This document shows, piece after piece, positions 34,241-62,321 of a DNA stretch of 64,000 nt (the stretch's first letter is position 1; the number at the start of each line of letters is the position of its first letter). The notes beneath the pieces are model-generated. The model worked only from the letters and a program-made list of their open reading frames with translations. It was not told the origin of the DNA and made no database searches. Position numbers and translations under genes: made by a program. The stretch lies in IMG/VR virus record IMGVR_UViG_3300028394_002328, positions 248,001 to 312,000 of that record, one strand, 5' to 3'.

Positions 34241-34271
34241 ATTTAAATTACTGTCAGTAACGAGGGGCTAT

Positions 34272-34475: not shown

Positions 34476-34497
34476 TGTATTTTCTTTTAAAGTAAAT

Positions 34498-34573
34498 TGG
34501 TGCCCCCTGACGGATTCGAACCGCCGACCTACTGATTACAAATCAGTTGCGCTACCAGCTGTGCCAAGAGGGC
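34498..34573 (-). tRNA. tRNA-Thr (TGT)
   Basis: Cloverleaf, CCA. Confidence 0.95.
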
Positions 34574-44497: not shown

Positions 44498-45679
44498 ATG
44501 AATCCAAAAACCTGTATGTTTCCTTTCACTTCATTGAGTGTGTCGCCCCGAGGCGCAATCAGACCATGCTGCATGTATAATAGTCCTGATATGCCCACTT
44601 GGGAAAATATCAAAGACTTAACATCGGAAGTACCATGGCCTAGCAAATCTATTAAGATACTTCAAGAAAAAATGTTGAGTGATCGCATAGAAGAATTAAC
44701 TCCATTGTGCAACTCTTGTTGGGAACCTGAAAATGCAGGACTTGATAGTCATAGATTAAGATACCAAAGATTATTAGCACTTCCAAATGAAGAGTTAATT
44801 AAAACCCCTAAACTAACATTTTTAGATTTACAGTTTGGATACTTATGTAATTTAAGTTGTATTATGTGCCATCCCGAAGAAAGTTCACAGGTTCAAAAAA
44901 CAATTTTCAAATTAATAGACAATACTTCAAATACTAAACAAAAAAAAATTTACCAATCTAAGGTAAATTTATATGACAACCATGATTGGACTGTAGATGA
45001 AAATTCGTATCAAAAAGTTTTGGAATTATGCCAGCCTGTCAAGAATATTAAAATATCAGGGGGAGAGCCATTTTTTAATCCAAAATTTAAACCTTTCTTA
45101 GAATTTTTATTATCAAAAAAAGTTCCAATTGAATACTTGCATGTGACCACAAATTTAACTATATACGATAAAGACATTGTTGAACTGTTAAATAGATTTA
45201 CTAATGTTAGATTTAGATTCAGTTTAGAATCAATAGGTAAAGAAGATGACTTTATAAGATGGCCTAGCAGATGGGAGGAAAAACAAGAAAATTTACATGC
45301 ATATTTAAGTCAGTTACACACAAAAAACATTGTTTCTAGTACATGCATCCAAAGTTTAAATCTATTTTCTTTTTCAAATACTATTAAATTCTTGAAAAAT
45401 TTACGTTATAATATCAATATTCAACAACAAATTGCTGAAAATTCATTAGCTGGGATTTATTACTCCGACAAACAATATATTGAACACTACTTAAAAAATA
45501 ATGAAGCTAATTTTATATCTAAGTATTTAGAAAATATTATAACCCATATCAATGATCCTTCATTTCAAGTTAATTATTTTCTAGATATGGCCAAACTACA
45601 AAATAAAAATATACAAAACGAATTTCCAATTTGGTATGAGTTTCATACCAAATATATTAGAGATTCAAATTCAACGTAA
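44498..45679 (+). CDS. radical SAM enzyme with N-terminal twitch/SPASM-like domain
   Basis: CMFP..RPCC..CNSCW; CNLSCIMC; SGGEP. Confidence 0.88.
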   Translation: MNPKTCMFPFTSLSVSPRGAIRPCCMYNSPDMPTWENIKDLTSEVPWPSKSIKILQEKMLSDRIEELTPLCNSCWEPENAGLDSHRLRYQRLLALPNEELIKTPKLTFLDLQFGYLCNLSCIMCHPEESSQVQKTIFKLIDNTSNTKQKKIYQSKVNLYDNHDWTVDENSYQKVLELCQPVKNIKISGGEPFFNPKFKPFLEFLLSKKVPIEYLHVTTNLTIYDKDIVELLNRFTNVRFRFSLESIGKEDDFIRWPSRWEEKQENLHAYLSQLHTKNIVSSTCIQSLNLFSFSNTIKFLKNLRYNINIQQQIAENSLAGIYYSDKQYIEHYLKNNEANFISKYLENIITHINDPSFQVNYFLDMAKLQNKNIQNEFPIWYEFHTKYIRDSNST

Positions 45680-46373
45680 AGTTTGGATTTAGTGCGTGAA
45701 GATATTCGTAAAATGCATCATTTAATTTTGAATCCCGTTTTCTAAATGTAATAACTAATGCAATTCTTTTACCTGTTAAAAAATTAGCTCCATGAATAAT
45801 ATCGGTTCTAAAATAATACCAGGTTTTAGGTTTTAAAATCGTACTAGTTATTTCTTTATAACCTCTTATATCCCGTATATTTTTCATTGTTTCATGTTTA
45901 TATAACGAGCTATTTGGATCATGATACCAACTTGTAATAATATTTTCACCGCCCAAATCTATAAAATATATAAGTTCACCGGCTCTTCCTTTATCAACAT
46001 GGGGGGTTTGCCAACCATTTTTTTCCGTGGATTTGGGCCATGTTGTTTGAAGATGAATCATCCAATCGTCTCCGACCGAATCTTTATCCCCATTATATTT
46101 AAATTCAGAAAGTAAAGGAAAAGTGTTTTTAGACCATTCAATCATAGGTTCTAATTCATTTGGATGTAGCTTATGATGTAAGAAATAAGCGACATTTGTA
46201 ATTCTTCCATCATCAGTATCAACATATGGTCTTCTATCAGGATCATTTATTTGATCTAATTCACTAGCTACTACTCGTTGCGGATCAGGTTCATAGTTTT
46301 TAGGAACAGGAGTCTCTAAATTTCGATTCCCTAAGTTCATATCCATATAGCAAAGAATTTTAGAATAGTCCAT
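45657..46373 (-). CDS. 2OG-Fe(II) oxygenase-like protein
   Basis: PHVD...IIHG...RIAL. Confidence 0.6.
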   Translation of the reverse strand: MDYSKILCYMDMNLGNRNLETPVPKNYEPDPQRVVASELDQINDPDRRPYVDTDDGRITNVAYFLHHKLHPNELEPMIEWSKNTFPLLSEFKYNGDKDSVGDDWMIHLQTTWPKSTEKNGWQTPHVDKGRAGELIYFIDLGGENIITSWYHDPNSSLYKHETMKNIRDIRGYKEITSTILKPKTWYYFRTDIIHGANFLTGKRIALVITFRKRDSKLNDAFYEYLHALNPNFTLNLNL

Positions 46374-46412
46374 TTTGTCTCATAAATATCTATTTATTAT
46401 AAGAGAAGTTGA

Positions 46413-47357
46413 ATGTTTTTTACTGGCCATAATAATTGGTATCAATGGGGATATGACAATTCAAATTGGTTAGGGCGACGGACATCAATAGATCAGACAT
46501 TTTGTAGTAGATATGTCATTGACAAAATAAAATCAATGACATTTGCAGAAGCTTTGGATTATAACTTAAAGACCTTTGTTAATGACTTTCCAAATGAAAA
46601 ATATGCTTTATTATTATCTGGAGGATCAGAAAGTGAAACGGTATTTCGAACATTTATAAAAAATAAAGTTGACTTTACTCCATATATTTTTCGTTATGAA
46701 AACGACATAAACATTTACGATGTATCATACGCTATTACACTGTGCGAATCACATGAGAAAAAATATAGGTTAATTGATCTAAATTTAAAAAAATTTTTTG
46801 AACATGGTGCCGAAAAAATAAGCGAATATGCTCAAATTGACAACCCCCGTTTGTTACCACAATTAAAGTTTTTAGATTATATTGATGAAATGCCAATTGG
46901 CTGTCACGGTGAACCGAGCTGGCATAGGCTTAATCATAGTTACGAAGAGCCTGGTATATGGGTTAATTCTGAATTTGAATTTGAAATGGGATGGGACAAA
47001 TATATTCAACGCACCAATCGAACATCTATAATGTTATGGTTTAAATATACCCCCGAACTTGCATTAGCATATAACCAAACACCGTGGATTAATACGTTAA
47101 TAAATGACGGATTTTATGGTAAGCTTGGGCCTAGAAGTACAAAAATTCAAGCATATAAACAAGTTTACCCTGAAATGCTTTTTAGAAAAAAACAAACCGG
47201 ATTTGAAAAAATTGAATTCGTTATTGACGAATTTGAAAAATTTTTATATCAAAAGTATAATGGATTTTTATACCGAGGAATAGTACAACGATCTAGAGAG
47301 GAAGTTTTTAAAATATTATTGAAAAATGTAAATACTTTTATGACGTTACTGCCGTAA
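46413..47357 (+). CDS. PP-loop-like enzyme
   Basis: LLSGGSESE; C-terminal RKKQTGFE reminiscent of the asparagine synthetase family. Confidence 0.6.
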   Translation: MFFTGHNNWYQWGYDNSNWLGRRTSIDQTFCSRYVIDKIKSMTFAEALDYNLKTFVNDFPNEKYALLLSGGSESETVFRTFIKNKVDFTPYIFRYENDINIYDVSYAITLCESHEKKYRLIDLNLKKFFEHGAEKISEYAQIDNPRLLPQLKFLDYIDEMPIGCHGEPSWHRLNHSYEEPGIWVNSEFEFEMGWDKYIQRTNRTSIMLWFKYTPELALAYNQTPWINTLINDGFYGKLGPRSTKIQAYKQVYPEMLFRKKQTGFEKIEFVIDEFEKFLYQKYNGFLYRGIVQRSREEVFKILLKNVNTFMTLLP

Positions 47358-47664
47358 CTAATTGATGCGTAATATTATTTTCCAAACAATAAGCGTCTAT
47401 TAAAGATTCAAATCTTGCCAAACCTAAAGGATCCGATTTAAAGTTTAGATATTGCTCTTCACTTTGCCAAATATTATGCATAGTAAGAGTTAGATTATCT
47501 TCTGAATATTCAAACTGTGAGGTTAACCAAAACATAGTCTGTACATAATTATTACTAAAGTTTATACAGTATTCAATTTCCTCCGGTGAAGAAAATGACC
47601 ATTGTGGTATATAAAAATTTACTGAAGTGCTAGGTCTTACTTGAGTTCTTGTCACAGTGTACAT
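47338..47664 (-). CDS. small hypothetical protein
   Basis: GGAG SD, TAAATA upstream. Confidence 0.7.
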   Translation of the reverse strand: MYTVTRTQVRPSTSVNFYIPQWSFSSPEEIEYCINFSNNYVQTMFWLTSQFEYSEDNLTLTMHNIWQSEEQYLNFKSDPLGLARFESLIDAYCLENNITHQLVTAVTS

Positions 47665-47736
47665 ACTATTCTCCCATTATAATGTATTTATTATAATTAG
47701 AATTAAACCTTTGGTAACCAAAGGTTTAATAGTCCA

Positions 47737-47874
47737 TCACAGAAGTTCGTAGTCCTGTTTACCTACTCCACATTCAGGACAAGCAAAATCATCAGGTAAA
47801 TCTTCCCAATGACCTTCTAGTTCTTCATTGTGGACATGACCACATACGATACAAACGTGTTCTTGATTAGCCAT
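47737..47874 (-). CDS. rubredoxin (not in ORF track)
   Basis: MANQEHVCIVCGHVH...WEDLPDDFACPECGVGKQDY. Confidence 0.9.
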   Translation of the reverse strand: MANQEHVCIVCGHVHNEELEGHWEDLPDDFACPECGVGKQDYELL

Positions 47875-48325
47875 GAGTTAACTCCTCCAATTTTTGTAGA
47901 TAGGCGGCCGCATGACGTTCTTCAACTCGCTTAAGAGCGGCAAAACGTTTTTCTGCCTTAGCTAAAATTTGTGCAAATTGTTCGGCATGCTCTCGGCTTT
48001 CTTCAATTTGTTCACCAAATTCTTTGACTGCATGACCATACATTTCATCGGATGCTTGTCCTTGGAACGTTGGATACATTTCCATGTATTCGTAAGTTTC
48101 CCCTTCAATGGCTTTAGTTAAACATTCTACAGTATTGGGCTTGCCAATAAGTAACTCAAGATGACCCCAAGCATGTTTGAGTTCTTGATCCGCTGTATGC
48201 TCAAAATGTTGGGCAATATCTTCATGCCCTTCTTCACGGGCGATCCGAGCAAAATAGCGATATTTAATATGAGCCATTGATTCGCCTGCCAATGCGCTCT
48301 CTAAGTTCTTAAGTGTGTTTGACAT
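47867..48325 (-). CDS. rubrerythrin
   Basis: AGESMAHIKY, QELKHA, EGETYEY..MYP, ESREH, EERHA. Confidence 0.9.
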   Translation of the reverse strand: MSNTLKNLESALAGESMAHIKYRYFARIAREEGHEDIAQHFEHTADQELKHAWGHLELLIGKPNTVECLTKAIEGETYEYMEMYPTFQGQASDEMYGHAVKEFGEQIEESREHAEQFAQILAKAEKRFAALKRVEERHAAAYLQKLEELTHG

Positions 48326-48397: not shown

Positions 48398-48952
48398 TTA
48401 AAATGAGTGAGTGTACGCTAGGTTATAGCTGTGATTGAAACTGTCACCACGAACTAGGTCATAACGAAGACCAACACTATCATGTTTGGTAATAGCATAG
48501 CTAACACCGGCACGAGCAGTATGGGTAGTGTCAAGATCACCATTGTTACCAAAACCATTACGGAAACGATAACCAACCTTGGCAGTTAGCTTGTCAAACA
48601 TAGTGTATGTAACGCCCGGCTCGACACTGTAGTAACCAAAATTAGCGCCATTAGTGAACTTTTCACCTGTAGCAACACGGGTGTAAACACCAACTGGGCC
48701 AACTGGTAGTGAACCAGTTAAACCAACTTCAAGACGGTCGCTAAGTGCTTTAGTGCCAGCCTGTTGGTAAGCTGTAAAGCCAATATCACCGGCAAACATT
48801 TTGCCAAATGATTCTTTAACGCTGAGTTGATAGTTGCTGCTGTCGCGGGCACCACGATCACCCTTTTGGATTTGATCTTCAAGGGTAATGCTAGCTGCAT
48901 TGGCTAGACCAGTAACAGCCGCTAGTGCTGCGATTGCGAAAACTTTCTTCAT
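48398..48952 (-). CDS. small outer-membrane beta-barrel (KdgM/porin-like)
   Basis: Signal peptide, amphipathic strands, C-terminal YTHSF. Confidence 0.8.
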   Translation of the reverse strand: MKKVFAIAALAAVTGLANAASITLEDQIQKGDRGARDSSNYQLSVKESFGKMFAGDIGFTAYQQAGTKALSDRLEVGLTGSLPVGPVGVYTRVATGEKFTNGANFGYYSVEPGVTYTMFDKLTAKVGYRFRNGFGNNGDLDTTHTARAGVSYAITKHDSVGLRYDLVRGDSFNHSYNLAYTHSF

Positions 48953-48981
48953 ATAGATATCTCCTTTAAAAAGTTTCATAC

Positions 48982-49010
48982 AGTATATATTTATTCTAAA
49001 GTGGTGTCAA
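48982..49010 (-). promoter_or_regulatory. sigma70 promoter with embedded TAAATA
   Basis: TTGACA-17-TATACT; spacer ends in TAAATA. Confidence 0.75.
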
Positions 49011-49059
49011 TATAATTTTTACCCATAAAAAATGTATAAATATTAAAAAAGGACAATAT

Positions 49060-49686
49060 ATGAGTGAGATTGTAATACCTTCAATTCGTGAAACATTGCG
49101 TATACAACGTTGGGACGATCATAGATATTATCATCATAGCAGAATTAATCAATTCTTACATTTGATTTCGGCTACTAGTTTCTTAGTAGCATATGTATAT
49201 TTGTTTGTCAACCCCGTAATCTCATCTTACATTGCTTGGTTTGTAGCTATGACTACACGCCAAATTGGGCATTTCTTTTTTGAACCCGATGGTTACGATG
49301 AATATAACAAGGCCACTTTTGAATACAAAGAAAAGATAAAAGTTGGATTCAATCTCAAACGTAAACGAGTGTTACTAGCATGTTGGGCAGCAGTACCTAT
49401 ACTAGCTTACTTTGATGCCGAACTTTTTAACTTTATCATGCCCGATGCTAGCCCAGATACACTGTTTAATCGTATTGGGTGGGGTTGGTTATGGTTGGGT
49501 GTAGCAGGTGTAGTATTTAGAATGATTCAACTTACTGCTATTGAAAGTCGCCGTACTGCTATCACTTGGTGTATTAAGATCATTACAGATCCATTCCACG
49601 ATGTCGTTATCTATCGTAAAAGTCCACTATATTTAATGCAGGGACAACTCATTGACCCCGACTTAAGACAAGACTACGAAGATTAA
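49060..49686 (+). CDS. Mpo1/DUF962-like membrane protein
   Basis: HRYYHHSRINQFLH, RQIGHFFFE, several TMs. Confidence 0.7.
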   Translation: MSEIVIPSIRETLRIQRWDDHRYYHHSRINQFLHLISATSFLVAYVYLFVNPVISSYIAWFVAMTTRQIGHFFFEPDGYDEYNKATFEYKEKIKVGFNLKRKRVLLACWAAVPILAYFDAELFNFIMPDASPDTLFNRIGWGWLWLGVAGVVFRMIQLTAIESRRTAITWCIKIITDPFHDVVIYRKSPLYLMQGQLIDPDLRQDYED

Positions 49687-50321
49687 TTTTCAAGACTTAG
49701 ATATTAAATAACTGATGTACTATTTAGAATTGCCTAATTTTCCAACAGATGTGTTGACCGAGCAGTATCAACGTCCAGGCTCGTATGATATTAAAGTTAA
49801 TTATTGGAATGTTAAAATAGAATTTTTTAAAAAACAGATAATTGATTTTTTTGTAAGTCATAATCTAGAATTAAAAGATGGAGAAATATTTAAGAAAAGT
49901 CCCGGAATAATAGGTATTGTTCATACTGATGTTGTTTGGGATAGTTTTCAATCTGCATGGACCCGTTGGCATTGTGCTGTTAATATTAACCTTGACAACA
50001 CTAATTCATTGATGTATTGGTTTTCAACTACCGATACTGAAGTGTATCCCATGCCAGGAGCAACTGGATTAAGAGGAATTCATTATGGCACTAAAAATAA
50101 TAACAACTTTCATGACCGTGATGAATATACAGTCCTCGATAGTTTTTGCATTAATGGTCCAACGCTAGTAAGAACCAGTGTTCCTCACTTGGTTAAGAAT
50201 TTAGATAATAAAGATCGGTGGTGCCTTAGTCTAAGATTTAAGGGAAACCCAACTTTTGAAGAATGTGCTAAGAAATTGCTCCTTTAAAGTGATCTACGCC
50301 AAGACTACGAAGATTAATTTT
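49669..50321. repeat. 22-bp direct repeat flanking a single-gene cassette
   Basis: CAAGACTACGAAGATTAATTTT at 49669-49690 and 50300-50321. Confidence 0.9.
49715..50287 (+). CDS. cupin/2OG-Fe(II) oxygenase-like protein
   Basis: VHTD...AVNIN...VPHLVKN...RWCLSLRF. Confidence 0.6.
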   Translation: MYYLELPNFPTDVLTEQYQRPGSYDIKVNYWNVKIEFFKKQIIDFFVSHNLELKDGEIFKKSPGIIGIVHTDVVWDSFQSAWTRWHCAVNINLDNTNSLMYWFSTTDTEVYPMPGATGLRGIHYGTKNNNNFHDRDEYTVLDSFCINGPTLVRTSVPHLVKNLDNKDRWCLSLRFKGNPTFEECAKKLLL

Positions 50322-50667
50322 TAGACATTGACCCAATTTTATTGGGTACATTCATTCTGTCTTCAATAACAGCAATATGCTGACGATTCTCAGCAATCAT
50401 GTCACGGTTACGTTGAATCTCTTTTTCGAGGTCTTGACGTAACTTTTCACGGGCAAGTTCTGCTCCTGAATTGTTGGCCTGTTTGTTATCGCTAGTAACT
50501 ACTAGAGAAATCTTACCATTCAATATGGTAACGTCATGACTGAGGTTCTGTAGGGCACTCATTAGGTACACTACACATGAGAATAACAACGGTAATAGTG
50601 CAAAACTAATCTTTTCAATTAGTTGGCTTTTGGCGTGTGCTTGATCAACTTTTTCCTGCATATCCAT
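50314..50667 (-). CDS. membrane-anchored coiled-coil protein
   Basis: TM plus coiled coil. Confidence 0.7.
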   Translation of the reverse strand: MDMQEKVDQAHAKSQLIEKISFALLPLLFSCVVYLMSALQNLSHDVTILNGKISLVVTSDNKQANNSGAELAREKLRQDLEKEIQRNRDMIAENRQHIAVIEDRMNVPNKIGSMSKN

Positions 50668-50702
50668 AATCTCCTCTTTTAACTATTTATTAAAATAGTA
50701 TA

Positions 50703-51323
50703 TTATTTACCAGCCAGTGGGTTGTCCATGGCTTTTTGAATCTTTTGATCAACTTCACGCTTTAGTGTTTCCACTTCACGATTGATTTCTCTACGGGCAG
50801 TAGTAAACTCTGAATTAATCTCTTTACGAGTTTGTTCCATATCTTTGCGTATGGTAGCAGCCTCACTACGGGCTCTTTCTAAATCTTCACGCACTGCTTT
50901 ACGCATATCACGCATTTCTTGTTCAGTTTCACGCTGTGCTTGTTTAACGCTGCGTTCTACTTGTTCTGTAACACTTTCATTACGACGGATATCATTCTTT
51001 AAATCGTTTTTGATATCTCTAGTATAGTCACTGGTCTTGCCTGAATTTTCTTCCATCACGGCCAATCGTTTATCAAAGCCCGACAGATCAGGAGCAGTGT
51101 ATTCAGAAATCTTTTTCTTCATACTTTGATAGTCTTTATATACTTCAAAACAGCCATATAAGCCACCCAATGTACTACTAACAATAGTAAATGCTACCAT
51201 AAGTTTAGCAGGGGTAAATTCATAGCCACCAATACTAATTACAGTATCTTTGCTAGCATATTTTTTTACTGCGGCTTCGGCGTCATCAATCTTAGCGTCT
51301 ACGCTTTTAATTTCTTCAGTCAT
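50703..51323 (-). CDS. membrane-anchored coiled-coil protein
   Basis: Single TM, long helical repeats. Confidence 0.75.
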   Translation of the reverse strand: MTEEIKSVDAKIDDAEAAVKKYASKDTVISIGGYEFTPAKLMVAFTIVSSTLGGLYGCFEVYKDYQSMKKKISEYTAPDLSGFDKRLAVMEENSGKTSDYTRDIKNDLKNDIRRNESVTEQVERSVKQAQRETEQEMRDMRKAVREDLERARSEAATIRKDMEQTRKEINSEFTTARREINREVETLKREVDQKIQKAMDNPLAGK

Positions 51324-51324
51324 A

Positions 51325-53706
51325 TTATCTCCTATACTGTTGTTCTATCATCTGTTGATGTAAACGGTCTGTTGATAACTGTCTTAACGCTCTAGCATTA
51401 TCAACTGGGGTTTGGTTCTTATAGATTTCTTTTGGCTCATACATTTTGCCATCTTTAAGCATCAAATTAGTGTAGTTACTATAGCCAATTGGAGTAGTAG
51501 CCATCTTATTAATATCCACATTACCTGCTAGTTCATTTGCTGCGACATTAGTTTTTACTTTTTGATTTGACTCCGTAGTAGAATTTGTAGTTACAATTGG
51601 TTTTGTTTCAACTACTTCATTAAGTGGGTCTGTGCGATTAGTCATAAAGCCTGCCGTACTGCTAACCTGTTCTACTTCTGTTTGTCTAGTAAAACTCACT
51701 TGCTGTGATGTGGTCTGCTGCTGTTCAACAGGTGCTGCTGCCATAGCATAAAACAAGGTGTTCTGCGGTTGTACATAGGCAAACGTCATAAAAGATTGTT
51801 GATCGGTTGAAGATTGTGAAAATACAGGTGTATTTGATGTAGTAATGATTGGAGTTACTGCGGTCGCCACTGTTGTATTAGCAGATTTGTTAGGTTGCGG
51901 GGGTAGACTACTTGTTACTGTAATTTGAACAGGTTGAGTTGATTGTACCCTGTTAAAATAAGTTTGAGCAGCAGATATCATGCTATATTGTGAATCATTA
52001 GCCGTTGTTGTAGTAGATGACACAGTAGTAACTACGGGTGTAGATACTCTCAATGGGGCGGTTTGAACAGTTGTTGCCACAGTGGCAGATTTATTTTCGT
52101 TATTAAGGGGTGCTGCATTAACCATTGATAGACCTGATTGCGCTTGGCTAACAGGCGCACTCGCAGTGGCAGTGTTGGTTTGTCTTTGAGTCTGTACTGA
52201 TGCATTGGACAGTGTTTGGCTCATTGTAACTGCGGCTGTAGCAACTGACACAGCCTGTTGTTGAGCCTTGTCACCGGCCGCTGTTGCTTCTGTTGTAGCC
52301 ATTTGTACTGCGGAATTTTGTATTGCCTGTTCACGCTGTTGATTCTTAGCAATTATACTTAATGCTGCTGCTACAGTTTTGGATTGAGGACTGCCTTTGG
52401 CTGCTGTAGTATTGCTTGTTTGCTGTGGTGTTGATTGAGCAATATTGGCAGTGGTAACAGCAGAAGTACTAGCTGTGGGTGGTTCCGCTATTGGAGTGGA
52501 TGTTGTATTACTGGTACTAAGTTTGGCAGCCATTGCTTGAGCAAAGCCACTACAATCGGGACTATATAGTGGGTTCTTAACACAAGGATCTGGTGTATAA
52601 ATCAGACTCATTGAATAATTGCCAATTGAAGAACCTATACCAGATGCCCCACCTGAAAGTCTAATATTACCAAGTGCGGATTGATTCATGCTACTTGATA
52701 GTAGTAGTTGTGAATTTACTGTTCCACTAGTGCCTTCACTATTGAAACTATGATTTCTTGAAATTATGGTTTGATTACTGCTATTGGTCATTGAGGCACT
52801 AGCACTGACATATGCTGGAGTGTTCATCACCCAACTACACCCATCTTGATTCCAAGCAGTACATCCAAAGAACCCTTGCCCCACTGTATAATCAAATTTA
52901 TAATTAAAGCCATGTACTGTAGCACCAAACCCAGCACTTTTTAATGCTGTGTTAATAGCAACTACTTGAGTCATTGAAGTAGATACAGCATCAGGATTTG
53001 GGGCAAGATTACCGGTAGTTATTATGTTACCAAATCCCGAGCAAATAGAACTGTAAGCAGGATTTAATTTACAAGGATCTACAGTGTATAGTAAATTAAA
53101 GCTATCAACATGTACTCTAGGCCCATAATATCCTGCCCAGTTGTTTTGATCCTTACCAGTAAAACTAACGGTTATACTACTAGCTGAGGCGATATCGTAG
53201 CGATTATTAAAAAATTGTGTACCCGAAAAAGTAGTAAAGTTTGGCAAGTTTTGATTATAGTCATAATTGAAACTTTCTACAATGTTACCAGTACTACCTT
53301 TTAAGGAAACGTTGCCGGTTAAAGTTCCTCTATTACCCTGATAATTATTGAGGTCATTATTGATTTGCCACTGATAACGATATCCACTAAGTTGGACTCC
53401 TGCTCCAGAATTTGCCAATGCCTGATTAATCGCAATTGTTTGACTTACTGTACGAGGAGCATTGCTAAAAATAATATTACCCGTCGAGGGATTATATGCG
53501 GGTGTAGGTCCACCACTCGTTCCACCTGCCTCACCAGTAACGGTATTGTTCCAAGGTAGTCCACCGCCCAAATTCAGTATATTGTTAGTACTGTTTAGGT
53601 TTAGACCTGTAACAGGGTCTATATTTTGACTATTAGTGGAAGCCGAATAACTTGAAAGCAACAATGCCCAACAAGCTACCGAGACCAATTTTCTTAAGGG
53701 TGTCAT
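51325..53706 (-). CDS. large secreted protein with DPC-x2-NP-x-YS-x2-C-x-G repeats and S/T/Q/A-rich stalk
   Basis: Signal peptide; two beta-rich domains, each ending in a DPC..C motif. Confidence 0.75.
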   Translation of the reverse strand: MTPLRKLVSVACWALLLSSYSASTNSQNIDPVTGLNLNSTNNILNLGGGLPWNNTVTGEAGGTSGGPTPAYNPSTGNIIFSNAPRTVSQTIAINQALANSGAGVQLSGYRYQWQINNDLNNYQGNRGTLTGNVSLKGSTGNIVESFNYDYNQNLPNFTTFSGTQFFNNRYDIASASSITVSFTGKDQNNWAGYYGPRVHVDSFNLLYTVDPCKLNPAYSSICSGFGNIITTGNLAPNPDAVSTSMTQVVAINTALKSAGFGATVHGFNYKFDYTVGQGFFGCTAWNQDGCSWVMNTPAYVSASASMTNSSNQTIISRNHSFNSEGTSGTVNSQLLLSSSMNQSALGNIRLSGGASGIGSSIGNYSMSLIYTPDPCVKNPLYSPDCSGFAQAMAAKLSTSNTTSTPIAEPPTASTSAVTTANIAQSTPQQTSNTTAAKGSPQSKTVAAALSIIAKNQQREQAIQNSAVQMATTEATAAGDKAQQQAVSVATAAVTMSQTLSNASVQTQRQTNTATASAPVSQAQSGLSMVNAAPLNNENKSATVATTVQTAPLRVSTPVVTTVSSTTTTANDSQYSMISAAQTYFNRVQSTQPVQITVTSSLPPQPNKSANTTVATAVTPIITTSNTPVFSQSSTDQQSFMTFAYVQPQNTLFYAMAAAPVEQQQTTSQQVSFTRQTEVEQVSSTAGFMTNRTDPLNEVVETKPIVTTNSTTESNQKVKTNVAANELAGNVDINKMATTPIGYSNYTNLMLKDGKMYEPKEIYKNQTPVDNARALRQLSTDRLHQQMIEQQYRR

Positions 53707-55159
53707 CTTCTTTTACCTCTACTGCCACTGGCATTTTTTCTGGGTTGGCTTCCCATGCTGCTCGTGCCGCATCTCCAATTTTACCTTCATACGGGCAAGG
53801 TGTGCCTGCGCTCCACATAGCATCAAACACACGGCGATCCTGACACATTGTGGCAACTGCTGCTACCTTCATACCCATATCGTAAAGTGTTTTGGCTAAC
53901 TTTAGTCTTTCGCAATTAACATCTCTAATAGTAGAACCACTACTAACACCAAAGATTTGTGTTTGAACAGCACCACTTACACCAGTGGTACATAGGTCAG
54001 CATTACCACCACTCATCATAGTAGGAGCGATTGCTGTAGGAGGGGGTTGTATAACTCTTTGTGTAATCTCTGACGAATTAATATTTCGGTTAGTCATGTC
54101 ACCAGTTTGTACATTTTGGTTGACATTGTTACTATTATTAGTATTACTACTAGTACTTGAACTTAAACTAGTGTTTACATTGTTATTGTTGTTGGTCATT
54201 GTACCTGAGTTAATGTTATTATTGGTATTAACATTACTGTTTGTGCTGGTGCTGTTATTAATATTTCTATTAGTCATGCTGCCACTAGTGATATTATTGT
54301 TAGTATTAACAGCAGTGCTAGTGCTTGCATTGTTATTGTTATAAGTCATTGTGCCAGTATTAACATTCACGTTTCTGTTAGTACTTGTGCTGGTACTAAC
54401 ATTATTATTGTTATTGGTCATCGTACCATAATTGTAATTGGTACTGTTATTAGTATTGACATTTCTGCTTGTACTAGTATTAACATTTTTATTGACATTA
54501 TTGCTAGTACTAGCGTTATTGTTATTGTATGTCATTGTACCGCTGTTGATATTGTTGTTGGTATTGACATTGTTACTAGTACTAGTGCTGGTACTGGCAT
54601 TATTGTTATTGTATGTCATTGTACCTGAATTAATATTGTTATTGGTATTGACACTGGTACTTGTGTTGGTATTGATATTACGGTTAGTCATATCACCACT
54701 ATTGACATTATTGTTGTTATATGTCATTGTACCACTATTAACATTGTTATTGGTATTAACACTAGTACTAACGTTATTATTGTTGTTAGTCATTGTTCCA
54801 GTGTTCACATTGTTATTGTTATAAGTAACAGTTCCGCTGTTAACATTGTTATTGTTATTGTTATAAGTAACAGTTCCGCTGTTGACATTGTTGTTGGTAA
54901 CCGTACCGCTTTGGATATTATTATTTGTATTAACGCTGGTATTGACGTTATTGCTGTTGCTGTTTACTGTACTAGTGCTCGTACTATTGCTGCTACTAGT
55001 ACTGGTATTTGTTGTATTGACACTGCTGGTACTATTACTAGTGCTATTAGTATCCACCAAAGTTTTAGAATCATAACTACCTTGATTAATTAAAGTTTGA
55101 CTATAGGCCGTACCCGTAAAAAAGACGATACTGGTAGATACCAATATTTTTTTAAGCAT
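53633..55159 (-). CDS. secreted Asn/Thr-rich repeat protein with Cys-rich C-terminal domain and TM tail
   Basis: Signal peptide; repeats such as NNNNVNSGTMTY; domain with four Cys; hydrophobic C-terminus. Confidence 0.8.
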   Translation of the reverse strand: MLKKILVSTSIVFFTGTAYSQTLINQGSYDSKTLVDTNSTSNSTSSVNTTNTSTSSSNSTSTSTVNSNSNNVNTSVNTNNNIQSGTVTNNNVNSGTVTYNNNNNNVNSGTVTYNNNNVNTGTMTNNNNNVSTSVNTNNNVNSGTMTYNNNNVNSGDMTNRNINTNTSTSVNTNNNINSGTMTYNNNNASTSTSTSNNVNTNNNINSGTMTYNNNNASTSNNVNKNVNTSTSRNVNTNNSTNYNYGTMTNNNNNVSTSTSTNRNVNVNTGTMTYNNNNASTSTAVNTNNNITSGSMTNRNINNSTSTNSNVNTNNNINSGTMTNNNNNVNTSLSSSTSSNTNNSNNVNQNVQTGDMTNRNINSSEITQRVIQPPPTAIAPTMMSGGNADLCTTGVSGAVQTQIFGVSSGSTIRDVNCERLKLAKTLYDMGMKVAAVATMCQDRRVFDAMWSAGTPCPYEGKIGDAARAAWEANPEKMPVAVEVKEDDTLKKIGLGSLLGIVAFKLFGFH

Positions 55160-55210: not shown

Positions 55211-56212
55211 TTAACATTTATCTACTAAGTTATCTCTAAATATACGCCAACACTCTTCCCAACTCCAACGTAGACTAGCTTCTTCTACACGAACACGATC
55301 TAATCGCAAACATTGGTCAATAGCAGTCTTTAAATCCTCATCCATATAACCTGTTAGTCCCTGATCTATAACATCTTTAGGTCCAGTTACTGGATATGCT
55401 GCTACTGGTGTGCCACAAGCCATAGCTTCAATCATTACTATACCAAACGTATCCCAATAACTAGGGAATACGAATACATCAGCATCGGCGTAATACTTAG
55501 CTAGTTCTGCCCCACGTTTTACTCCTACGAATTCAACATCAGGATATTCACGCTCCATACGACGGCGGCATGGACCATCACCTACGACTATTTTGGTAGC
55601 ACTTGGATAGTATAATCTACAAAAATCATCTAAGTTTTTTTCTTTGCTGACACGCCCTACATTTAACAATATGGGCTGTGATAGTTCTGTAGCAGTTCTA
55701 GTGCTGCTGCTAAATATGGTACGATCAACCCCGCGAGTCCAAGGCTTGATGTCGGTTCTAAATCCACGACTAGCCAAATCATCAACCATGCTTTGTGTAG
55801 TGGTCAGTACACGACCACTATGTTTATGAAACCAACGCAAGTAACGATAACTCCAGTCAGTGGGTATGCCTGCAATTTTGTTTATGGCTTCGGGGAAACG
55901 AGTATGGTAGCTAGTATTATAACGCCATCCCCAATAGTCCATCCAGCAACGGGCAGCAAAGCCCACTGGACCTTCTGTAGCAATGTGTATGTAGTCGGGA
56001 TTTACTTTTTCAATAATCCTGCCAATGCCCCAGGTCCAACTAAGTTTGATTTCACCATAGCCAGGACAGGGAATATTAACAAACTGCCGGGGATCAAGAT
56101 AAACAAAATCATAGCCATCCCGCTCAGCCAAAACTTCCAGGTTATGAAAGGTAGTAACAACACCATTAACCTGCGTTGGTTCATTGTCGGTTATGATTAA
56201 TACTGTCTTCAT
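55211..56212 (-). CDS. GT4 glycosyltransferase, Agt-like diacylglycerol glycosyltransferase
   Basis: TD...QVNGVV, HIATEGPVG, SYHTRFPE, VGRVSKEKN, DTFGIVMIEAMACGTPV. Confidence 0.85.
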   Translation of the reverse strand: MKTVLIITDNEPTQVNGVVTTFHNLEVLAERDGYDFVYLDPRQFVNIPCPGYGEIKLSWTWGIGRIIEKVNPDYIHIATEGPVGFAARCWMDYWGWRYNTSYHTRFPEAINKIAGIPTDWSYRYLRWFHKHSGRVLTTTQSMVDDLASRGFRTDIKPWTRGVDRTIFSSSTRTATELSQPILLNVGRVSKEKNLDDFCRLYYPSATKIVVGDGPCRRRMEREYPDVEFVGVKRGAELAKYYADADVFVFPSYWDTFGIVMIEAMACGTPVAAYPVTGPKDVIDQGLTGYMDEDLKTAIDQCLRLDRVRVEEASLRWSWEECWRIFRDNLVDKC

Positions 56213-56966
56213 TTTCACGCACCTCTGCCCATGTTACGATTTCCCAGCGACCATCCCAATGTTCAACTAGTGCTGTACAACTTTCACACCAGTCACCATC
56301 GTTCATGTAGATTACGCCGTTGATTTCTTTGATTTCAGCCTTATGTATATGCCCACAGATCACACCATCGTAGCCCTTCTTTTTGCAATAACCGGCTAGA
56401 TTTTGTTCAAATTGAAACATAAAGTCTACCGCTTTTTTGACCCGGTGCTTAAGGTACAAGCTAAGGCTCCAGTAGCCAAAACCCAAACGATGACGAATCC
56501 AATTGAATTTAGTATTGATATTGAGTACGCAGTCATATGCTTTGTCTCCTAATATGCTGAGCCAAGGGGCCAGCCTAGTAATACCATCAAATAAATCACC
56601 ATGAACTACAAGATACCTTTTTCCATCTATACCGGTGTGAATAGCCTGATTACAGATTTTAATACGACCAAAACTAACACCATATGGTATAAGTGGGCGT
56701 AAAAATTCATCATGATTGCCTGCCACATAAACTACTTGTGTTCCGCGTTTGGCATGACCTAATACACGGCGAATTACATTGGTATGACTTTGATGCCACT
56801 TTAGAGTGTTCTGTTTCATTTTCCACGCATCTATAATATCGCCTACTAGATACAACGTTTCGCAACTATTATGTTTTAAAAAGTTGTTTAGATAGTCTGC
56901 TTTACAGGCTTTAGTACCGAGGTGTACATCACTAATAGAGATTGTACGGTAAGTTGTTTGCGGCAT
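56181..56966 (-). CDS. PlcP-like Mn-dependent phospholipase C (LpxH/YbbF metallophosphoesterase family)
   Basis: SDVHLG, LVGDIID, GNHDEFLR, HGDLFD, GYWSLS, CGHIH, NDGDWCESCTAL. Confidence 0.85.
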   Translation of the reverse strand: MPQTTYRTISISDVHLGTKACKADYLNNFLKHNSCETLYLVGDIIDAWKMKQNTLKWHQSHTNVIRRVLGHAKRGTQVVYVAGNHDEFLRPLIPYGVSFGRIKICNQAIHTGIDGKRYLVVHGDLFDGITRLAPWLSILGDKAYDCVLNINTKFNWIRHRLGFGYWSLSLYLKHRVKKAVDFMFQFEQNLAGYCKKKGYDGVICGHIHKAEIKEINGVIYMNDGDWCESCTALVEHWDGRWEIVTWAEVRENEDSINHNRQ

Positions 56967-57844: not shown

Positions 57845-59419
57845 TCAGAAACTCAATAATAGTAGCTGTCCACCTTCAATTAATTCAGCAGCATTAGCAC
57901 CAGTTGCTGCTTTGTGATTTTGATCAACCAATAAGAAGTAACGCTTGCCATCAGTACGACCTAAGATACTGGTGATTTCAATGATACCACTGGATTCTTC
58001 GTCATTGGTCTCAGTTCCAACAACACCTGTGTAATAATCACCAAACAGCTTCTCATCATGTTGAGCAAGTAGTGTTAGTGCCTTGGTAACAGGATTGTAT
58101 CTCCAAATCTTACCATTGTGATTGTTACCACCCACATCTTCTTGTAGAATGATTGTGCCATCGCTAGCAACAGTCATGTTGTCAAACATCTGTGTGCCAT
58201 GAACACGACCGGCAACAGTAACTGTTTCAGTACCATCGAGCACCATTTCAAGGATACCACCCGATTCAGGACGGGTTAAATCAGTAAATGTCATGCTCCA
58301 AAGGCGTGTGCGACCAACTTGAGCAGTATTAGTAATACTGGTATTGATCTTGCCCCCGGTGTTGTCTTTAGCAGCATCTACTGTGTTGGTTGTTACAAAG
58401 TAGTAGCGGTTCTTGTTAACTGTATCCCAAGCACCATCTTCTGGACGCAAGAAACTTGTACCAGCAACACCAGTTACAGGAACATTGGGAACAAAACTAA
58501 ATGTAGCAGTCTTGTTGACTAGTCCTAAACCAGCATCAGTAGCAGTGGTTTCATTAGCAGCAACACCACCAACATTGACCACAGCACGATACAGCGTACC
58601 ATTGGTTAGGCCTGCTTTATCAACTTCAGTAGCACCAGTCTTGTTCTTAGTGCCGACATACATATAAACACCATTGCTGCCACTGTCGCTATTGGCCATA
58701 ACAATGGTCTTATCGCCGCTGTTAGGATGTGCGATTAGATTTTCCCAGCCTACACCAAATGTGGTAAATCCACCAAAGTGTGGGAGAATGTATGCTTTGC
58801 CTTTGTCTGCTCCACTAGCCACAATAGCAACACCCCGACCCATTGTAACAGTACCGTTAGCGGTTTCTTCACCAGTCATAAACATTTTAACCGAAGAACC
58901 ATTGCCTGTTGCTGAGTTGAAGAAAGCGCCGGCTGCTGGTAGATCGGCTGAACAGAAACGCTGAAATGCTACAGCAGTTTGCTCGGCCCAAGCACCATTG
59001 ACCTGTGCATAAACTTTTTTCATTAGGTCACTACCGCTCTTGACCTGTAGAGTAGTTTTATCAATAACCCACTCACTAACAAAAGCACCAATACCACCAT
59101 GAGCACGGGCAATACCAACAGTGTTGGCCAGTTCATGAGCCATTAGCACGGTGAATGTGTTGTCACCATTGTCGTAAGCACCTAGCCCATCCGGGATACC
59201 TACCATGCGATAAGTGCCAACAGCGTCACCAACGGTTAAGATACTGGCAACTTTTACGCTGCTGTCAATTGGTGTGATATAAGGATCTGCTGAACTACTA
59301 GTTGCTTTGCCTGATGTAAAACCAGTAACTTCTTTGGGTGCTGCTACAGTGGTGTCATCGCTACCACATGCTGTTAATAGAGCCGTTGCTACGGCTACTG
59401 CTAGAACGGTATATTTCAT
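57845..59419 (-). CDS. PhoX-like alkaline phosphatase lipoprotein
   Basis: Lipobox LTAC; PDGLG, HE, RFCS, GEE, WEN, RPED, DN, QED, ESSG. Confidence 0.75.
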   Translation of the reverse strand: MKYTVLAVAVATALLTACGSDDTTVAAPKEVTGFTSGKATSSSADPYITPIDSSVKVASILTVGDAVGTYRMVGIPDGLGAYDNGDNTFTVLMAHELANTVGIARAHGGIGAFVSEWVIDKTTLQVKSGSDLMKKVYAQVNGAWAEQTAVAFQRFCSADLPAAGAFFNSATGNGSSVKMFMTGEETANGTVTMGRGVAIVASGADKGKAYILPHFGGFTTFGVGWENLIAHPNSGDKTIVMANSDSGSNGVYMYVGTKNKTGATEVDKAGLTNGTLYRAVVNVGGVAANETTATDAGLGLVNKTATFSFVPNVPVTGVAGTSFLRPEDGAWDTVNKNRYYFVTTNTVDAAKDNTGGKINTSITNTAQVGRTRLWSMTFTDLTRPESGGILEMVLDGTETVTVAGRVHGTQMFDNMTVASDGTIILQEDVGGNNHNGKIWRYNPVTKALTLLAQHDEKLFGDYYTGVVGTETNDEESSGIIEITSILGRTDGKRYFLLVDQNHKAATGANAAELIEGGQLLLLSF

Positions 59420-60425: not shown

Positions 60426-60463
60426 TTGATTTCCTTTAATAATATGTGCTCTTGCACAATTAT

Positions 60464-60498
60464 TATTTAATAATAATTATGTTACAGGAATATTACAA
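60464..60498 (-). promoter_or_regulatory. Pho-box-like repeat plus TAAATA promoter (pstS-phoX)
   Basis: TGTAAT-N5-TGTAAC-N11-TAAATA. Confidence 0.8.
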
Positions 60499-60529
60499 GG
60501 CGCCCAAAATGAATAATATTTTTAAAACT

Positions 60530-61461: not shown

Positions 61462-61776
61462 TTACTTAAAATAGATAAGTACCAATGCCATTGCTTGTAG
61501 CATAAATCCTACACCAATAGTAGCGATATTAAGTAAATCTTTGAGCAAAATAGCACGAAAGAATAACAAACATAGAGCGGACCACAACATCAAAACAACA
61601 TCTACATTGGGTGCTTTGTCAGTTAACCCTGTCATCAAGGCTAAAAACGAAGGTAGTGTAGCCGCATGAAGCGCAATATTAGCTAACCACCCTAGCGTGT
61701 CCGCAGAAATTTTGTGTAACTTAGTGGTAAGAAATTCAATTAAAAATGTATAAAGGTCTACTAACTTGGTCATCAT
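61462..61776 (-). CDS. small multi-pass membrane protein
   Basis: Three TMs. Confidence 0.65.
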   Translation of the reverse strand: MMTKLVDLYTFLIEFLTTKLHKISADTLGWLANIALHAATLPSFLALMTGLTDKAPNVDVVLMLWSALCLLFFRAILLKDLLNIATIGVGFMLQAMALVLIYFK

Positions 61777-62321
61777 GCTTTATCCTTGTAAAAAATATGG
61801 TTACCGATTTTGTTGATTTTTTGATATGGCCATGCCGGGTGAACATATACAGCATGATAATACAATGCATCATGTAAACTGTCAAGTCTAAACCCTTCTA
61901 ACAACACTTTTTTGGCTACCGCATAACTTTCTTTATATGCTTCGTCCGTGGGTTTAGATTTAGTCTTACCTATGCAATACCAGCTAAATTGACATACTAC
62001 TTTTTCCATGATGACGTTCTTTTGGTAAACTACAGCACATACATCTTTAGGAAATCTAGGATCGTCTACACGGTTAAGGGTCACTTGAGCAACCGCAACC
62101 TTACCTTCAAATGATTCCTGAGCCGCTTCTTTGTAAATATTCATAGCCAAACAATCTAATGTTCTGTCTACATTTTTTGCTGACACATATGACCGTGGTT
62201 TGTCCAAAGCAACTTCTTGAACAGAACCAAACTTAAAAGCGGTTACTGCATTAATAAGTACAGCAAGTAATAGCACGCCGAAAATGCTATTAATCGTTCT
62301 GATTGAAAATTCCATTTTCAA
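61773..62321 (-). CDS. SleB/Hydrolase_2 cell wall hydrolase
   Basis: CLAMNIYKEA, VAQVTLNRV, CQFSW, YYHA, IGNHIFY. Confidence 0.9.
   Translation of the reverse strand: MKMEFSIRTINSIFGVLLLAVLINAVTAFKFGSVQEVALDKPRSYVSAKNVDRTLDCLAMNIYKEAAQESFEGKVAVAQVTLNRVDDPRFPKDVCAVVYQKNVIMEKVVCQFSWYCIGKTKSKPTDEAYKESYAVAKKVLLEGFRLDSLHDALYYHAVYVHPAWPYQKINKIGNHIFYKDKA

What the first reader, a model, noticed from the sequence alone, without database searches (positions are those of the whole stretch)
50314..55159. Secreted/membrane operon led by an extreme Asn-rich repeat protein
Gene 53633-55159 has a signal peptide, then roughly 340 residues made almost only of N/T/S/V/G/M with recurring NNNNVNSGTMTY and TSTSVNTNNN units, then a 4-Cys domain and a TM tail. 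It is followed by a 793-aa secreted Cys-motif protein and two membrane coiled-coil proteins. Asn ladders and TxT spacing suggest a beta-solenoid or amyloid-like fibre. Inference: a phage-built surface or periplasmic assembly on the infected cell (exclusion, aggregation, grazing defence or ice interaction).
Basis: partly seen in the sequence, partly recalled or inferred. Interest (0 to 1): 0.62.

Follow-up and report, generated by a model that had tools for sequence, protein, structure and literature searches.

The report
Widespread phage envelope three-gene cassette
The Asn-rich protein is one phage lineage's inflated copy of the first gene of a secreted/membrane three-gene cassette carried by thousands of aquatic phages, often just upstream of their lysis genes, whose function has never been tested.

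Summary
Four minus-strand genes of a 335-kb jumbo phage encode A (508 aa), B (793 aa), C (206 aa) and D (117 aa). A has a signal peptide, a 354-residue stretch that is 35% Asn, a 4-Cys domain and a hydrophobic tail. B is secreted and C and D are single-pass coiled-coil membrane proteins.

The Asn repeat is not the core. It models at low confidence. It is missing from 27 of 70 close relatives and from nearly all of the wider family. No CsgG or curlin gene is in the genome.

What is conserved is the order A-B-C, found in podo-, sipho-, myo- and jumbo phages. A's 4-Cys domain is phrog_20531, with 1,140 clusters at 50% identity, all viral. B has lectin-like jelly-rolls, a linker and a short conserved C-terminus. 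C is a membrane coiled coil ending in ENPL.

None of the three matches a Pfam or NCBIfam family. In 18 of 49 diverse loci an endolysin from one of five unrelated families lies within 3 kb downstream. A small membrane protein usually follows C.

Best guess, at about 0.35: a Sec-exported envelope complex tied to lysis, possibly a lipoprotein-free analogue of spanins. The fibre, amyloid and ice-binding readings are not supported.

The parts
53633..55159 (-). Gene A (508 aa): signal peptide, Asn-rich spacer, 4-Cys domain, hydrophobic C-terminal tail
   Evidence: ORF; composition; no Pfam or NCBIfam hit; 1,645 homologs of 279-889 aa, all unnamed
54035..55096 (-). A residues 22-375: Asn/Thr/Ser-rich repeat spacer, lineage-specific and hypervariable in length
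   Evidence: 35% Asn and 12 SGTMT-type units; DNA tandem repeats; pLDDT mostly below 50; A is 155-611 aa in 70 relatives and 27 of them lack the repeat
53720..54034 (-). A residues 376-480: PPPTAIAP motif plus the conserved 4-Cys domain (beta-hairpin and four helices), equal to phrog_20531
   Evidence: phrog_20531 E 3.7e-14; pLDDT 77-97; C390, C416, C439, C455 and P456 invariant; 60% identity to Pelagibacter phage HTVC115P; 1,140 clusters at 50% identity; all viral in the ESM Atlas
53636..53719 (-). A residues 481-508: charged stretch then a Gly-zipper-like hydrophobic C-terminal helix. Its last 74 nt overlap the start of gene B
   Evidence: Helix 487-504; a hydrophobic tail is present in 23 of 94 family representatives; overlap read from the coordinates
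51325..53706 (-). Gene B (793 aa): secreted; two lectin-like jelly-rolls, a long disordered linker and a short conserved C-terminal segment
   Evidence: ORF; fold; 562 homologs of the N-terminal half, all unnamed
53032..53619 (-). B residues 30-225: jelly-roll domain 1, glycan-binding-module-like
52537..53031 (-). B residues 226-390: jelly-roll domain 2, ending in the same DPC..NP.YS..C motif as domain 1
51547..52536 (-). B residues 391-720: T/S/A/Q-rich low-complexity linker
   Evidence: pLDDT 25-57; B is 278-960 aa in relatives
51328..51546 (-). B residues 721-793: conserved C-terminal segment (FY.PKEIY.NQ..VDN.RA...QQYK/R), shared with pelagiphage B proteins
   Evidence: Alignment; invariant columns; hhalign against pelagiphage B C-termini gives probability 69%, E 4e-5
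50703..51323 (-). Gene C (206 aa): single-pass membrane protein with a long coiled coil and a conserved (D/E)NPL C-terminus
   Evidence: TM at 41-59; 45% identity, E 6e-28, to HTVC115P gp49; family alignment A3 with conserved GG.KF.GGK, YKDY, APDLSGFDKR and ENPL motifs; at least 7,583 homologs
50314..50667 (-). Gene D (117 aa): small TM plus coiled-coil protein. It fills a variable slot and is not a conserved family member
   Evidence: Found in only about 6 of 80 related loci. In diverse loci the ORF after C has a TM in 41 of 63 cases against a 23% baseline, spread over 25 sequence clusters
55211..56966 (-). Upstream same-strand neighbours: GT4 glycosyltransferase and LpxH-like metallophosphoesterase. 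They may be co-transcribed here but do not belong to the conserved cassette
   Evidence: Pfam and NCBIfam hits; adjacency kept in only a few relatives; terminator-like site at 57034-57015 on the minus strand, upstream of them
61462..62321 (-). Putative lysis pair of this phage: SleB-type cell-wall hydrolase with an N-terminal TM (61773-62321) and a 104-aa multi-TM ORF (61462-61776). It lies 6.3 kb upstream of A on the same strand
   Evidence: Hydrolase_2 E 3.4e-26; sequences; the holin role of the 104-aa ORF is inferred only, with no family hit

Best explanation
Genes A, B and C are this jumbo phage's copy of a mobile three-gene cassette of aquatic phages. I think it builds a Sec-dependent complex in the envelope of the infected cell and works together with the lysis genes.

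Proposed working, all inferred:
- C sits in the inner membrane, with its coiled coil reaching into the periplasm.
- B is exported. It holds envelope glycan (peptidoglycan or LPS/capsule sugar) with its lectin-like jelly-rolls. It docks through its short conserved C-terminus.
- A is exported. It contributes the highly conserved disulfide-bonded 4-Cys domain, and in many members a membrane-active C-terminal helix.
- The low-complexity stretches of A and B are flexible spacers whose length drifts. The Asn repeat of this window is one such expansion.
- The complex would act at or just before the last step of lysis, in the peptidoglycan/outer-membrane layer, as a lipoprotein-free functional analogue of spanins or as a regulator of that step.
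- D fills a variable 'small membrane protein' slot like those occupied by holins and antiholins.

Shown here: the gene order, the export signals, the folds, and the position next to lysis genes. Not shown: that the three proteins bind each other, where they sit, or any role in lysis.
For: 1. Strict synteny across unrelated phages. The order A, B, C holds in Pelagibacter podoviruses HTVC023P and HTVC115P, siphovirus-like HTVC202P, myovirus Mosig and Roseobacter phages CRP-207 and CRP-810. It also holds in the jumbo clade. In 96 diverse IMG/VR loci a B-type gene is at +1 in 78, and C is at +2 or later in 69.

2. Envelope targeting. A and B have Sec-type signals. C and D have a single TM and a coiled coil.

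3. Directional linkage to lysis genes of non-homologous families.
- Of 49 diverse loci with at least 3 kb downstream of C, 18 have a GH24, GH19, glucosaminidase, SleB-like or M15 muralytic gene within 3 kb on the same strand.
- The count is 22 if GTA-type holins are included.
- Only 1 of 38 loci has one upstream.
- The identities of these genes were checked against Pfam and PHROGs.
- Chance expectation is about 6% for a 50-kb genome (my estimate).

4. The ORF after C is a small membrane protein in 41 of 63 loci, against a 23% baseline. These belong to 25 different sequence clusters. That matches how holin-like slots behave.

5. C has the architecture of an i-spanin: an N-terminal TM, a coiled coil and a conserved C-terminal tail.

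6. No Rz-family gene was detected in five genomes that carry the cassette.

7. B domain 1 is a glycan-binding-type jelly-roll.
Against: - None of A, B or D has a canonical lipoprotein signal, which is the defining feature of an o-spanin. A and B are also far larger than known spanins.
- In this window the cassette lies 6.3 kb from the putative endolysin/holin pair.
- Among jumbo relatives, only 6 of 36 loci with at least 3 kb on both flanks have a muralytic gene within 3 kb.
- In HTVC202P the M15 endolysin is about 19 kb away.
- HTVC027P, a relative of HTVC023P, lacks A and C. The cassette is therefore accessory there.
- The positive-inside rule does not settle C's topology: 2.2 K/R on the N flank against 3.1 on the C flank.
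- The linkage counts come from related contigs and a limited enzyme panel.
- A's domain is 60% identical between unrelated phages. That is unusually conserved for a lysis protein and hints at a conserved host target of another kind.
- No experiment exists, and no paper on the cassette turned up in three full-text searches.
Confidence: 0.35

Rival explanations
1. Superinfection exclusion or receptor masking. B's lectin-like domain binds the host surface glycan that phages use as a receptor, or its periplasmic precursor. A and C anchor or organise it. The infected cell, or its debris, then stops adsorbing phages.
For: - B domain 1 resembles the distal domains of phage tailspikes and tail fibres, and CBMs.
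- B's N-terminal domain is swapped between lineages (jumbo, pelagiphage and roseophage types fall in different clusters) while its position and C-terminus are kept. That is the pattern of host-specific binding modules.
- The spacer lengths are hypervariable.
- In pelagiphage podoviruses the cassette lies just downstream of tail-fibre-like and capsid genes.
- It is accessory within the HTVC023P-type, as exclusion genes usually are.
Against: - Only Sec signals are present, so there is no route to the cell surface.
- A and C are conserved between phages of very different hosts (SAR11, Roseobacter, unknown freshwater hosts). That is unexpected for receptor-specific exclusion.
- Known exclusion systems are single small proteins.
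- This reading does not explain the directional linkage to endolysin and holin genes.
Confidence: 0.22
2. Lysis-timing control, in the manner of a holin with an antiholin or sensor. C is a class-III-type holin or holin partner with a large periplasmic domain. A and B are periplasmic regulators, by analogy with T4 holin T and antiholin RI.
For: - C has the same gross layout as T4 T: about 200 aa, one TM, a large C-terminal domain. This is from my own knowledge and was not tested here.
- Linkage to lysis genes.
- Exported partners.
Against: - No sequence similarity to holin families.
- Many loci already carry a GTA-type holin next to the endolysin.
- C is a pure coiled coil, not a globular domain.
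Confidence: 0.1
3. The Asn-rich repeat of A forms a beta-solenoid or amyloid-like fibre on or in the envelope (aggregation, grazing defence, ice interaction), exported in the manner of curli.
For: - Q/N-rich imperfect repeats with a Gly turn recall curli subunits.
- A few beta-hairpins are modelled at the repeat units, pLDDT 50-68.
- Phage-borne curli (T8SS) modules do exist in pelagiphages (PMC9599517).
Against: - Most of the repeat models below pLDDT 50.
- There is no Curlin_rpt match and no CsgG in this genome or in complete relatives.
- The repeat is missing from 27 of 70 close relatives and is rare family-wide, while the rest of the cassette is kept.
Confidence: 0.05
4. Virion or assembly components: tail-associated proteins or chaperones encoded at the end of the structural region.
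For: In several podoviruses the cassette sits between tail-fibre or capsid genes and lysis genes. B's fold resembles tail-fibre tips.
Against: - Cleavable Sec signals on A and B and TM anchors on C and D are not expected in tailed-phage virion proteins.
- No structural PHROG or Pfam hit.
- In HTVC202P the cassette lies upstream of the terminase, away from the tail genes.
Confidence: 0.04

Closest known systems
Two-component spanins (lambda Rz/Rz1) and the unimolecular spanin T1 gp11
   Same: - C is an inner-membrane-anchored protein with a coiled coil and a conserved C-terminal tail, like an i-spanin.
- A has an N-terminal signal and often a C-terminal hydrophobic helix. That is the same end-to-end layout as a u-spanin.
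- The cassette often lies next to endolysin and holin genes and is exchanged between phages.
   Different: - No lipoprotein component.
- Three proteins rather than two, and 5-10 times larger.
- A lectin-like domain and a disulfide-bonded globular domain that spanins lack.
- No Rz-family similarity.
- Not always adjacent to lysis genes.
T4 holin T with antiholin RI (lysis inhibition)
   Same: A single-pass membrane protein with a large extracytoplasmic part, plus exported periplasmic partner(s). The analogy is from my own knowledge.
   Different: No sequence or fold relation was detected. C is a coiled coil. A and B are much larger than RI.
Phage-encoded curli (T8SS) module of pelagiphages (Wittmers et al. 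2022, PMC9599517)
   Same: It is also a multi-gene, envelope-directed cassette transferred between podo- and myovirus pelagiphages. It also includes a repeat protein.
   Different: That module is built from CsgG, CsgF and CsgA/B, which Pfam recognises. None of these is present here. The A-B-C genes are unrelated to it.
phrog_20531 (function unknown; type member Ralstonia phage RSP15 ORF122)
   Same: A's 4-Cys domain matches it (E 3.7e-14). RSP15 ORF122 has the same layout, with a Gly/Asn/Gln-rich spacer.
   Different: The PHROG carries no function. RSP15 shows no C homolog in my search.
Carbohydrate-binding jelly-rolls (Fbs1/FBA sugar-binding domain; CBM4, 16, 22, 61; tailspike distal domains)
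   Different: No sequence-family membership. The ligand is unknown. The periplasmic phage context is unusual.

Membership tests
Two-component spanin (Rz/Rz1 type) | i-spanin: N-terminal TM with a periplasmic coiled-coil domain | tested here: inconclusive
   C has one TM (41-59) and a long coiled coil. The positive-inside rule does not fix its orientation.
Two-component spanin (Rz/Rz1 type) | o-spanin: small outer-membrane lipoprotein with a lipobox Cys | tested here: not met
   A and B have SPase-I-type signals. In B and D the Cys sits inside a continuing hydrophobic segment. No embedded lipoprotein ORF of 50 aa or more lies on the minus strand between 50.3 and 51.3 kb. The check was by eye and regex; no LipoP-type predictor was available.
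Two-component spanin (Rz/Rz1 type) | Sequence membership in the Rz family (PF03245) | tested here: not met
   No hit in C or D. None in the whole genome or in four other genomes carrying the cassette.
Two-component spanin (Rz/Rz1 type) | Encoded within or next to the holin-endolysin cassette | tested here: inconclusive
   True in 18-22 of 49 diverse loci. Not true in this window (6.3 kb away) nor in most jumbo relatives.
Two-component spanin (Rz/Rz1 type) | Required for outer-membrane disruption after endolysin action | not testable with these tools
   Needs genetics or complementation.
Curli / type VIII secretion | Subunit with curlin repeats (PF07012) | tested here: not met
   No Pfam hit in A. 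No match genome-wide.
Curli / type VIII secretion | CsgG outer-membrane channel encoded alongside | tested here: not met
   No PF03783 match in this genome (95% complete), in two 98%-complete relatives, in Mosig or in HTVC023P.
Beta-solenoid ice-binding or antifreeze proteins | Regular beta-solenoid with flat TxT/TxN faces | tested here: not met
phrog_20531 | Profile match over the 4-Cys domain | tested here: met
   E 3.7e-14 for A residues 376-508. HTVC115P, CRP-810 and RSP15 homologs match the same profile.
Carbohydrate-binding jelly-roll (fold level only) | Beta-sandwich superposable on known sugar-binding modules | tested here: met

The most novel reading that the evidence does not exclude
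A-B-C is a previously unrecognised, lipoprotein-free, three-component machine for the envelope step of lysis: an outer-membrane/peptidoglycan disruptor or its controller. It is used by a large share of aquatic phages, including the most abundant pelagiphage types, and is exchanged as a cassette between podo-, sipho-, myo- and jumbo phages.
Probability: 0.25. Interest if true: 0.85.

Novelty: categorically new. Interest (0 to 1): 0.62.

Why it matters
About 15% of phages of Gram-negative hosts have no recognisable spanin (bioRxiv 10.1101/515445, seen). How SAR11 and Roseobacter phages breach the outer membrane is unknown.

This cassette is abundant in aquatic viromes:
- 1,140 clusters at 50% identity for A's domain.
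- At least 7,583 C proteins.
- At least 598 hits in IMG/VR for one pelagiphage subtype alone.

It occurs in cultured model phages (HTVC023P, HTVC115P, HTVC202P, Mosig, CRP-207, CRP-810), so its role can be tested directly. Whatever it does, it is a large, conserved and wholly unannotated investment in the host envelope. It takes about 7% of the 32-kb HTVC202P genome.

The work also corrects a likely mis-annotation. The 'lysozyme' label on CRP-207 gp73 and CRP-810 gp51 marks C homologs.

Finally, it shows that the eye-catching Asn repeat is a lineage-specific spacer expansion, not the functional core.

Tried and rejected
- Pfam, NCBIfam and PHROG scans of A-D gave only coiled-coil noise and phrog_20531.
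- PDB sequence and profile searches found nothing for A, compositional coiled-coil hits for C (apolipoprotein, HA2, spike HR1; E 1e-4 or worse) and nothing meaningful for B.
- The ESM Atlas search returned only viral hypothetical clusters.
- Complex prediction of A(376-485), B(715-793) and C(62-206) returned no answer. It is neither evidence for nor against binding.
- Direct BLASTP of B, C and D against HTVC115P gp53 and gp52 found nothing. The true C ortholog there is gp49.
- The A-B length correlation is Spearman 0.81 over 46 distinct triples. It did not survive a phylogenetically independent test: only 3 supported pairs, p about 1. It is kept only as an unexplained observation.
- The positive-inside rule did not resolve C's topology.
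- The GT4 and LpxH-like neighbours are not conserved with the cassette, so a glycosylation link was dropped.
- CsgG and curlin searches were negative.
- A scan of 185,579 species genomes found 34 loci, all in MAGs of incoherent taxonomy and none in isolates. That gives no prophage or host clue beyond a Polynucleobacter-labelled MAG.
I did not pursue expression data by other means, and read laying was not used.
- A first attempt to scan genomes with a 33-row alignment failed for lack of a conserved stretch.
Full report
**What is in the sequence**

The window is bases 248,001-312,000 of a 335,035-bp IMG/VR virus record, 95% complete by CheckV. It is AT-rich and carries 18 tRNA genes. This is a jumbo phage.

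Four minus-strand genes sit at the stated coordinates:
- A, 53633-55159, 508 aa.
- B, 51325-53706, 793 aa.
- C, 50703-51323, 206 aa.
- D, 50314-50667, 117 aa.

A starts with a Sec-type signal. Residues 22-375 are 35% Asn and 86% N/T/S/V/G/M, with 12 units of the type N(V/I)NSGTMTYNNNN. The DNA shows tandem repeats of period 36-108. A PPPTAIAP motif follows, then a domain with four Cys, then a short hydrophobic C-terminal helix.

B has a signal peptide and three Cys pairs. C and D each have one TM segment and a coiled coil.

One caveat concerns A's tail. It is only weakly hydrophobic. It has Lys before it and nothing after, so it is not a textbook stop-transfer anchor.

**No known family**

None of the four proteins reaches a Pfam or NCBIfam family. 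PDB sequence and profile searches give nothing beyond coiled-coil noise. The only family hit is phrog_20531, of unknown function, for A's 4-Cys domain.

**The conserved unit is a triad**

tblastn with A's last 135 residues finds 13 phage records. They include Pelagibacter phages HTVC115P (60% identity), HTVC202P, HTVC023P, HTVC033P, Mosig and Baldr, Roseobacter phages CRP-810 and CRP-207, and Ralstonia phage RSP15.

In every Pelagibacter and Roseobacter record I opened, the A homolog is followed directly by a larger secreted protein. A TM plus coiled-coil protein ending in NPL then follows, directly or after one to three small genes. RSP15 is the exception: only an A homolog was found there.

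C206 is 45% identical (E 6e-28) to HTVC115P gp49. The C family shares these features:
- An N-terminal GG.KF.GGK motif.
- The TM segment.
- A YKDY...APDLSGFDKR segment next to the membrane.
- A coiled coil of variable length.
- A (D/E)NPL C-terminus.

B proteins differ in their N-terminal domains between lineages but keep a short C-terminal segment (FY.PKEIY.NQ..VDN.R...QQYK). This shows in a direct alignment. hhalign gives probability 69%, E 4e-5, between the jumbo and pelagiphage types.

In 80 IMG/VR loci related to this phage, A-B-C is the common core. D is detected in about six, and the flanking genes vary. In 96 more distant loci, a B-type gene is at +1 in 78 and C is at +2 or later in 69.

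The family is very large:
- 1,645 A homologs in one length band.
- 1,140 clusters at 50% identity.
- At least 598 IMG/VR hits for a single pelagiphage subtype.
- 562 homologs of B's N-terminal half.
- At least 7,583 C proteins.

All Atlas neighbours are viral. Among 185,579 species genomes only 34 loci appear. All are in MAGs of incoherent taxonomy, so they look like mis-binned phage contigs.

**Structure**

AlphaFold2 of A, with a 126-sequence alignment, gives a confident 4-Cys domain. Residues 390-480 have pLDDT 77-97 and form a beta-hairpin plus four helices. The C-terminal helix has pLDDT near 70. The repeat is mostly below pLDDT 50, with a few hairpins at 50-68.

B has two confident jelly-rolls, at residues 30-225 and 226-390 (pLDDT 71-93). 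A roughly 330-residue disordered linker and a weakly modelled helical C-terminus follow.

Domain 1 superposes on sugar-binding modules:
- Foldseek E 9e-7 to tandem CBM22.

**The Asn repeat is a lineage-specific spacer**

In 70 relatives that share a C protein 65-99% identical to this one, A ranges from 155 to 611 aa. Twenty-seven have no repeat at all. Phages whose C is 91% identical carry a 176-aa A and a 278-aa B.

Of 81 family representatives, only 4 have a pre-domain region with 25% Asn or more. The median spacer is 69 residues.

The genome has no CsgG and no curlin repeats. Neither do two 98%-complete relatives. Phage curli modules are known in pelagiphages (PMC9599517), but they are a different, Pfam-recognisable gene set.

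A and B lengths correlate (Spearman 0.81). A test on phylogenetically independent pairs has no power here, so I treat this as unexplained.

**Function, by inference from context**

In diverse loci the cassette sits between structural genes and lysis genes.

Of 49 loci with at least 3 kb downstream of C, 18 have a muralytic gene within 3 kb on the same strand. The count is 22 if GTA-type holins are included. Only 1 of 38 has one upstream.

The enzymes belong to five unrelated families: GH24, GH19, glucosaminidase, SleB-like and M15. I checked four of them, and the GTA-type holin, against Pfam and PHROGs; M15 rests on the records' own annotation. The panel is limited, so these counts are a lower bound. 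The contigs are related to each other, so the counts are not independent events.

The ORF after C has a TM in 41 of 63 loci, against 23% of small ORFs generally. These ORFs fall into 25 clusters. D117 is this window's occupant of that variable slot.

C has i-spanin-like architecture. No Rz-family gene is found in five carriers.

Several points count against a simple spanin reading:
- There is no lipoprotein.
- The proteins are far larger than spanins.
- In this window the likely endolysin (SleB-type with an N-terminal TM, 61773-62321) and an adjacent multi-TM ORF (61462-61776) are 6.3 kb upstream.
- Jumbo relatives rarely show adjacency.
- HTVC202P has its endolysin 19 kb away.
- HTVC027P lacks the cassette.
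- C's topology is unresolved.

**Verdict**

It is wrong in its emphasis on the repeat as a fibre.

The most likely reading, at about 0.35, is an exported three-protein envelope complex working with the lysis genes. Receptor masking or exclusion (0.22) and lysis-timing control (0.10) are live rivals.

The cassette belongs to no described system I could find. It is testable in cultured model phages.

No other genetic code was used. 

Noticed in passing
window 61462-62321 (-): A SleB-type cell-wall hydrolase (Pfam Hydrolase_2, E 3e-26) with an N-terminal TM or signal-anchor. A 104-aa ORF with several hydrophobic segments follows with a 4-nt overlap. This is probably the phage's SAR-type endolysin and holin. 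No spanin-like gene is next to it.
   Followed up: partly
window 22988-34573 (-): A cluster of 18 tRNA genes, including two tRNA-Asn (GTT). That is notable next to a protein that is 25% Asn. No codon-usage analysis was done.
   Followed up: no
window 44498-48325 and 59445-60913: A run of host-like auxiliary genes around the cassette: radical SAM/SPASM (44498-45679), rubrerythrin (47867-48325), PstS-like phosphate-binding protein (59445-60425) and IscU/NifU (60530-60913).
   Followed up: partly
window 48398-49686: A 193-aa porin-like outer-membrane beta-barrel candidate (Porin_4, E 9e-6, just below the cut-off). A 208-aa Mpo1-like membrane protein sits beside it. These are further envelope-directed genes near the cassette.
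   Followed up: no
window 57845-59419 (-): A 524-aa protein with a clear lipoprotein signal (LLTAC) and no Pfam hit. Its sequence looks beta-propeller or PhoX-like by eye only.
   Followed up: no
window 53633-53706: Genes A and B overlap by 74 nt. The same DNA encodes A's hydrophobic tail in one frame and B's signal peptide in another. Relatives show similar overlaps, for example 86 nt in L081.
   Followed up: partly
L008:3292-3873 (CRP-207 gp73) and L003:5204-5626 (CRP-810 gp51): Both are annotated 'putative lysozyme' or 'lysozyme'. They are in fact TM plus coiled-coil proteins of the C family, ending in NPL, with no muralytic domain in Pfam or PHROGs. This is a likely mis-annotation.
   Followed up: yes
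L013, L032, L053, L078 compared with the window: Phages whose C protein is 74-91% identical to the window's carry very different A and B alleles (A 155-200 aa, B 278-748 aa). The cassette is mosaic inside. A and B lengths correlate (rho 0.81), but this is not separable from shared ancestry.
   Followed up: partly
L032:8637-9185, L053:8604-9152, L022:8622-9137; L013:8797-9291, L144:11007-11483: Two recurrent occupants of the slot after C are a DUF4337 three-TM protein and a phrog_32327 protein with a C-terminal TM. Each occurs in both jumbo and small phages.
   Followed up: partly
L215 (PBPT01000016.1, a 335,231-bp contig labelled Candidatus Neomarinimicrobiota MAG) and other MAG loci L209-L242: Contigs carrying the A domain are binned into MAGs of Actinomycetota, Melainabacteria, archaea, Bacteroides and others. 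They are almost certainly phage contigs mis-binned, and one is jumbo-phage sized.
   Followed up: no
protein P0396 (C-family homolog): It carries a precomputed Pfam label, PF28217.1. That family is absent from the Pfam copy available here, so a very recent Pfam family may already cover the C protein. I could not read its description.
   Followed up: no
G000:C1:330963-331136 (outside the window): A GH19-like segment inside a 1,503-aa ORF, probably a virion-associated lysin. A separate 209-aa GH19-like ORF lies at G000 141.5 kb.
   Followed up: no
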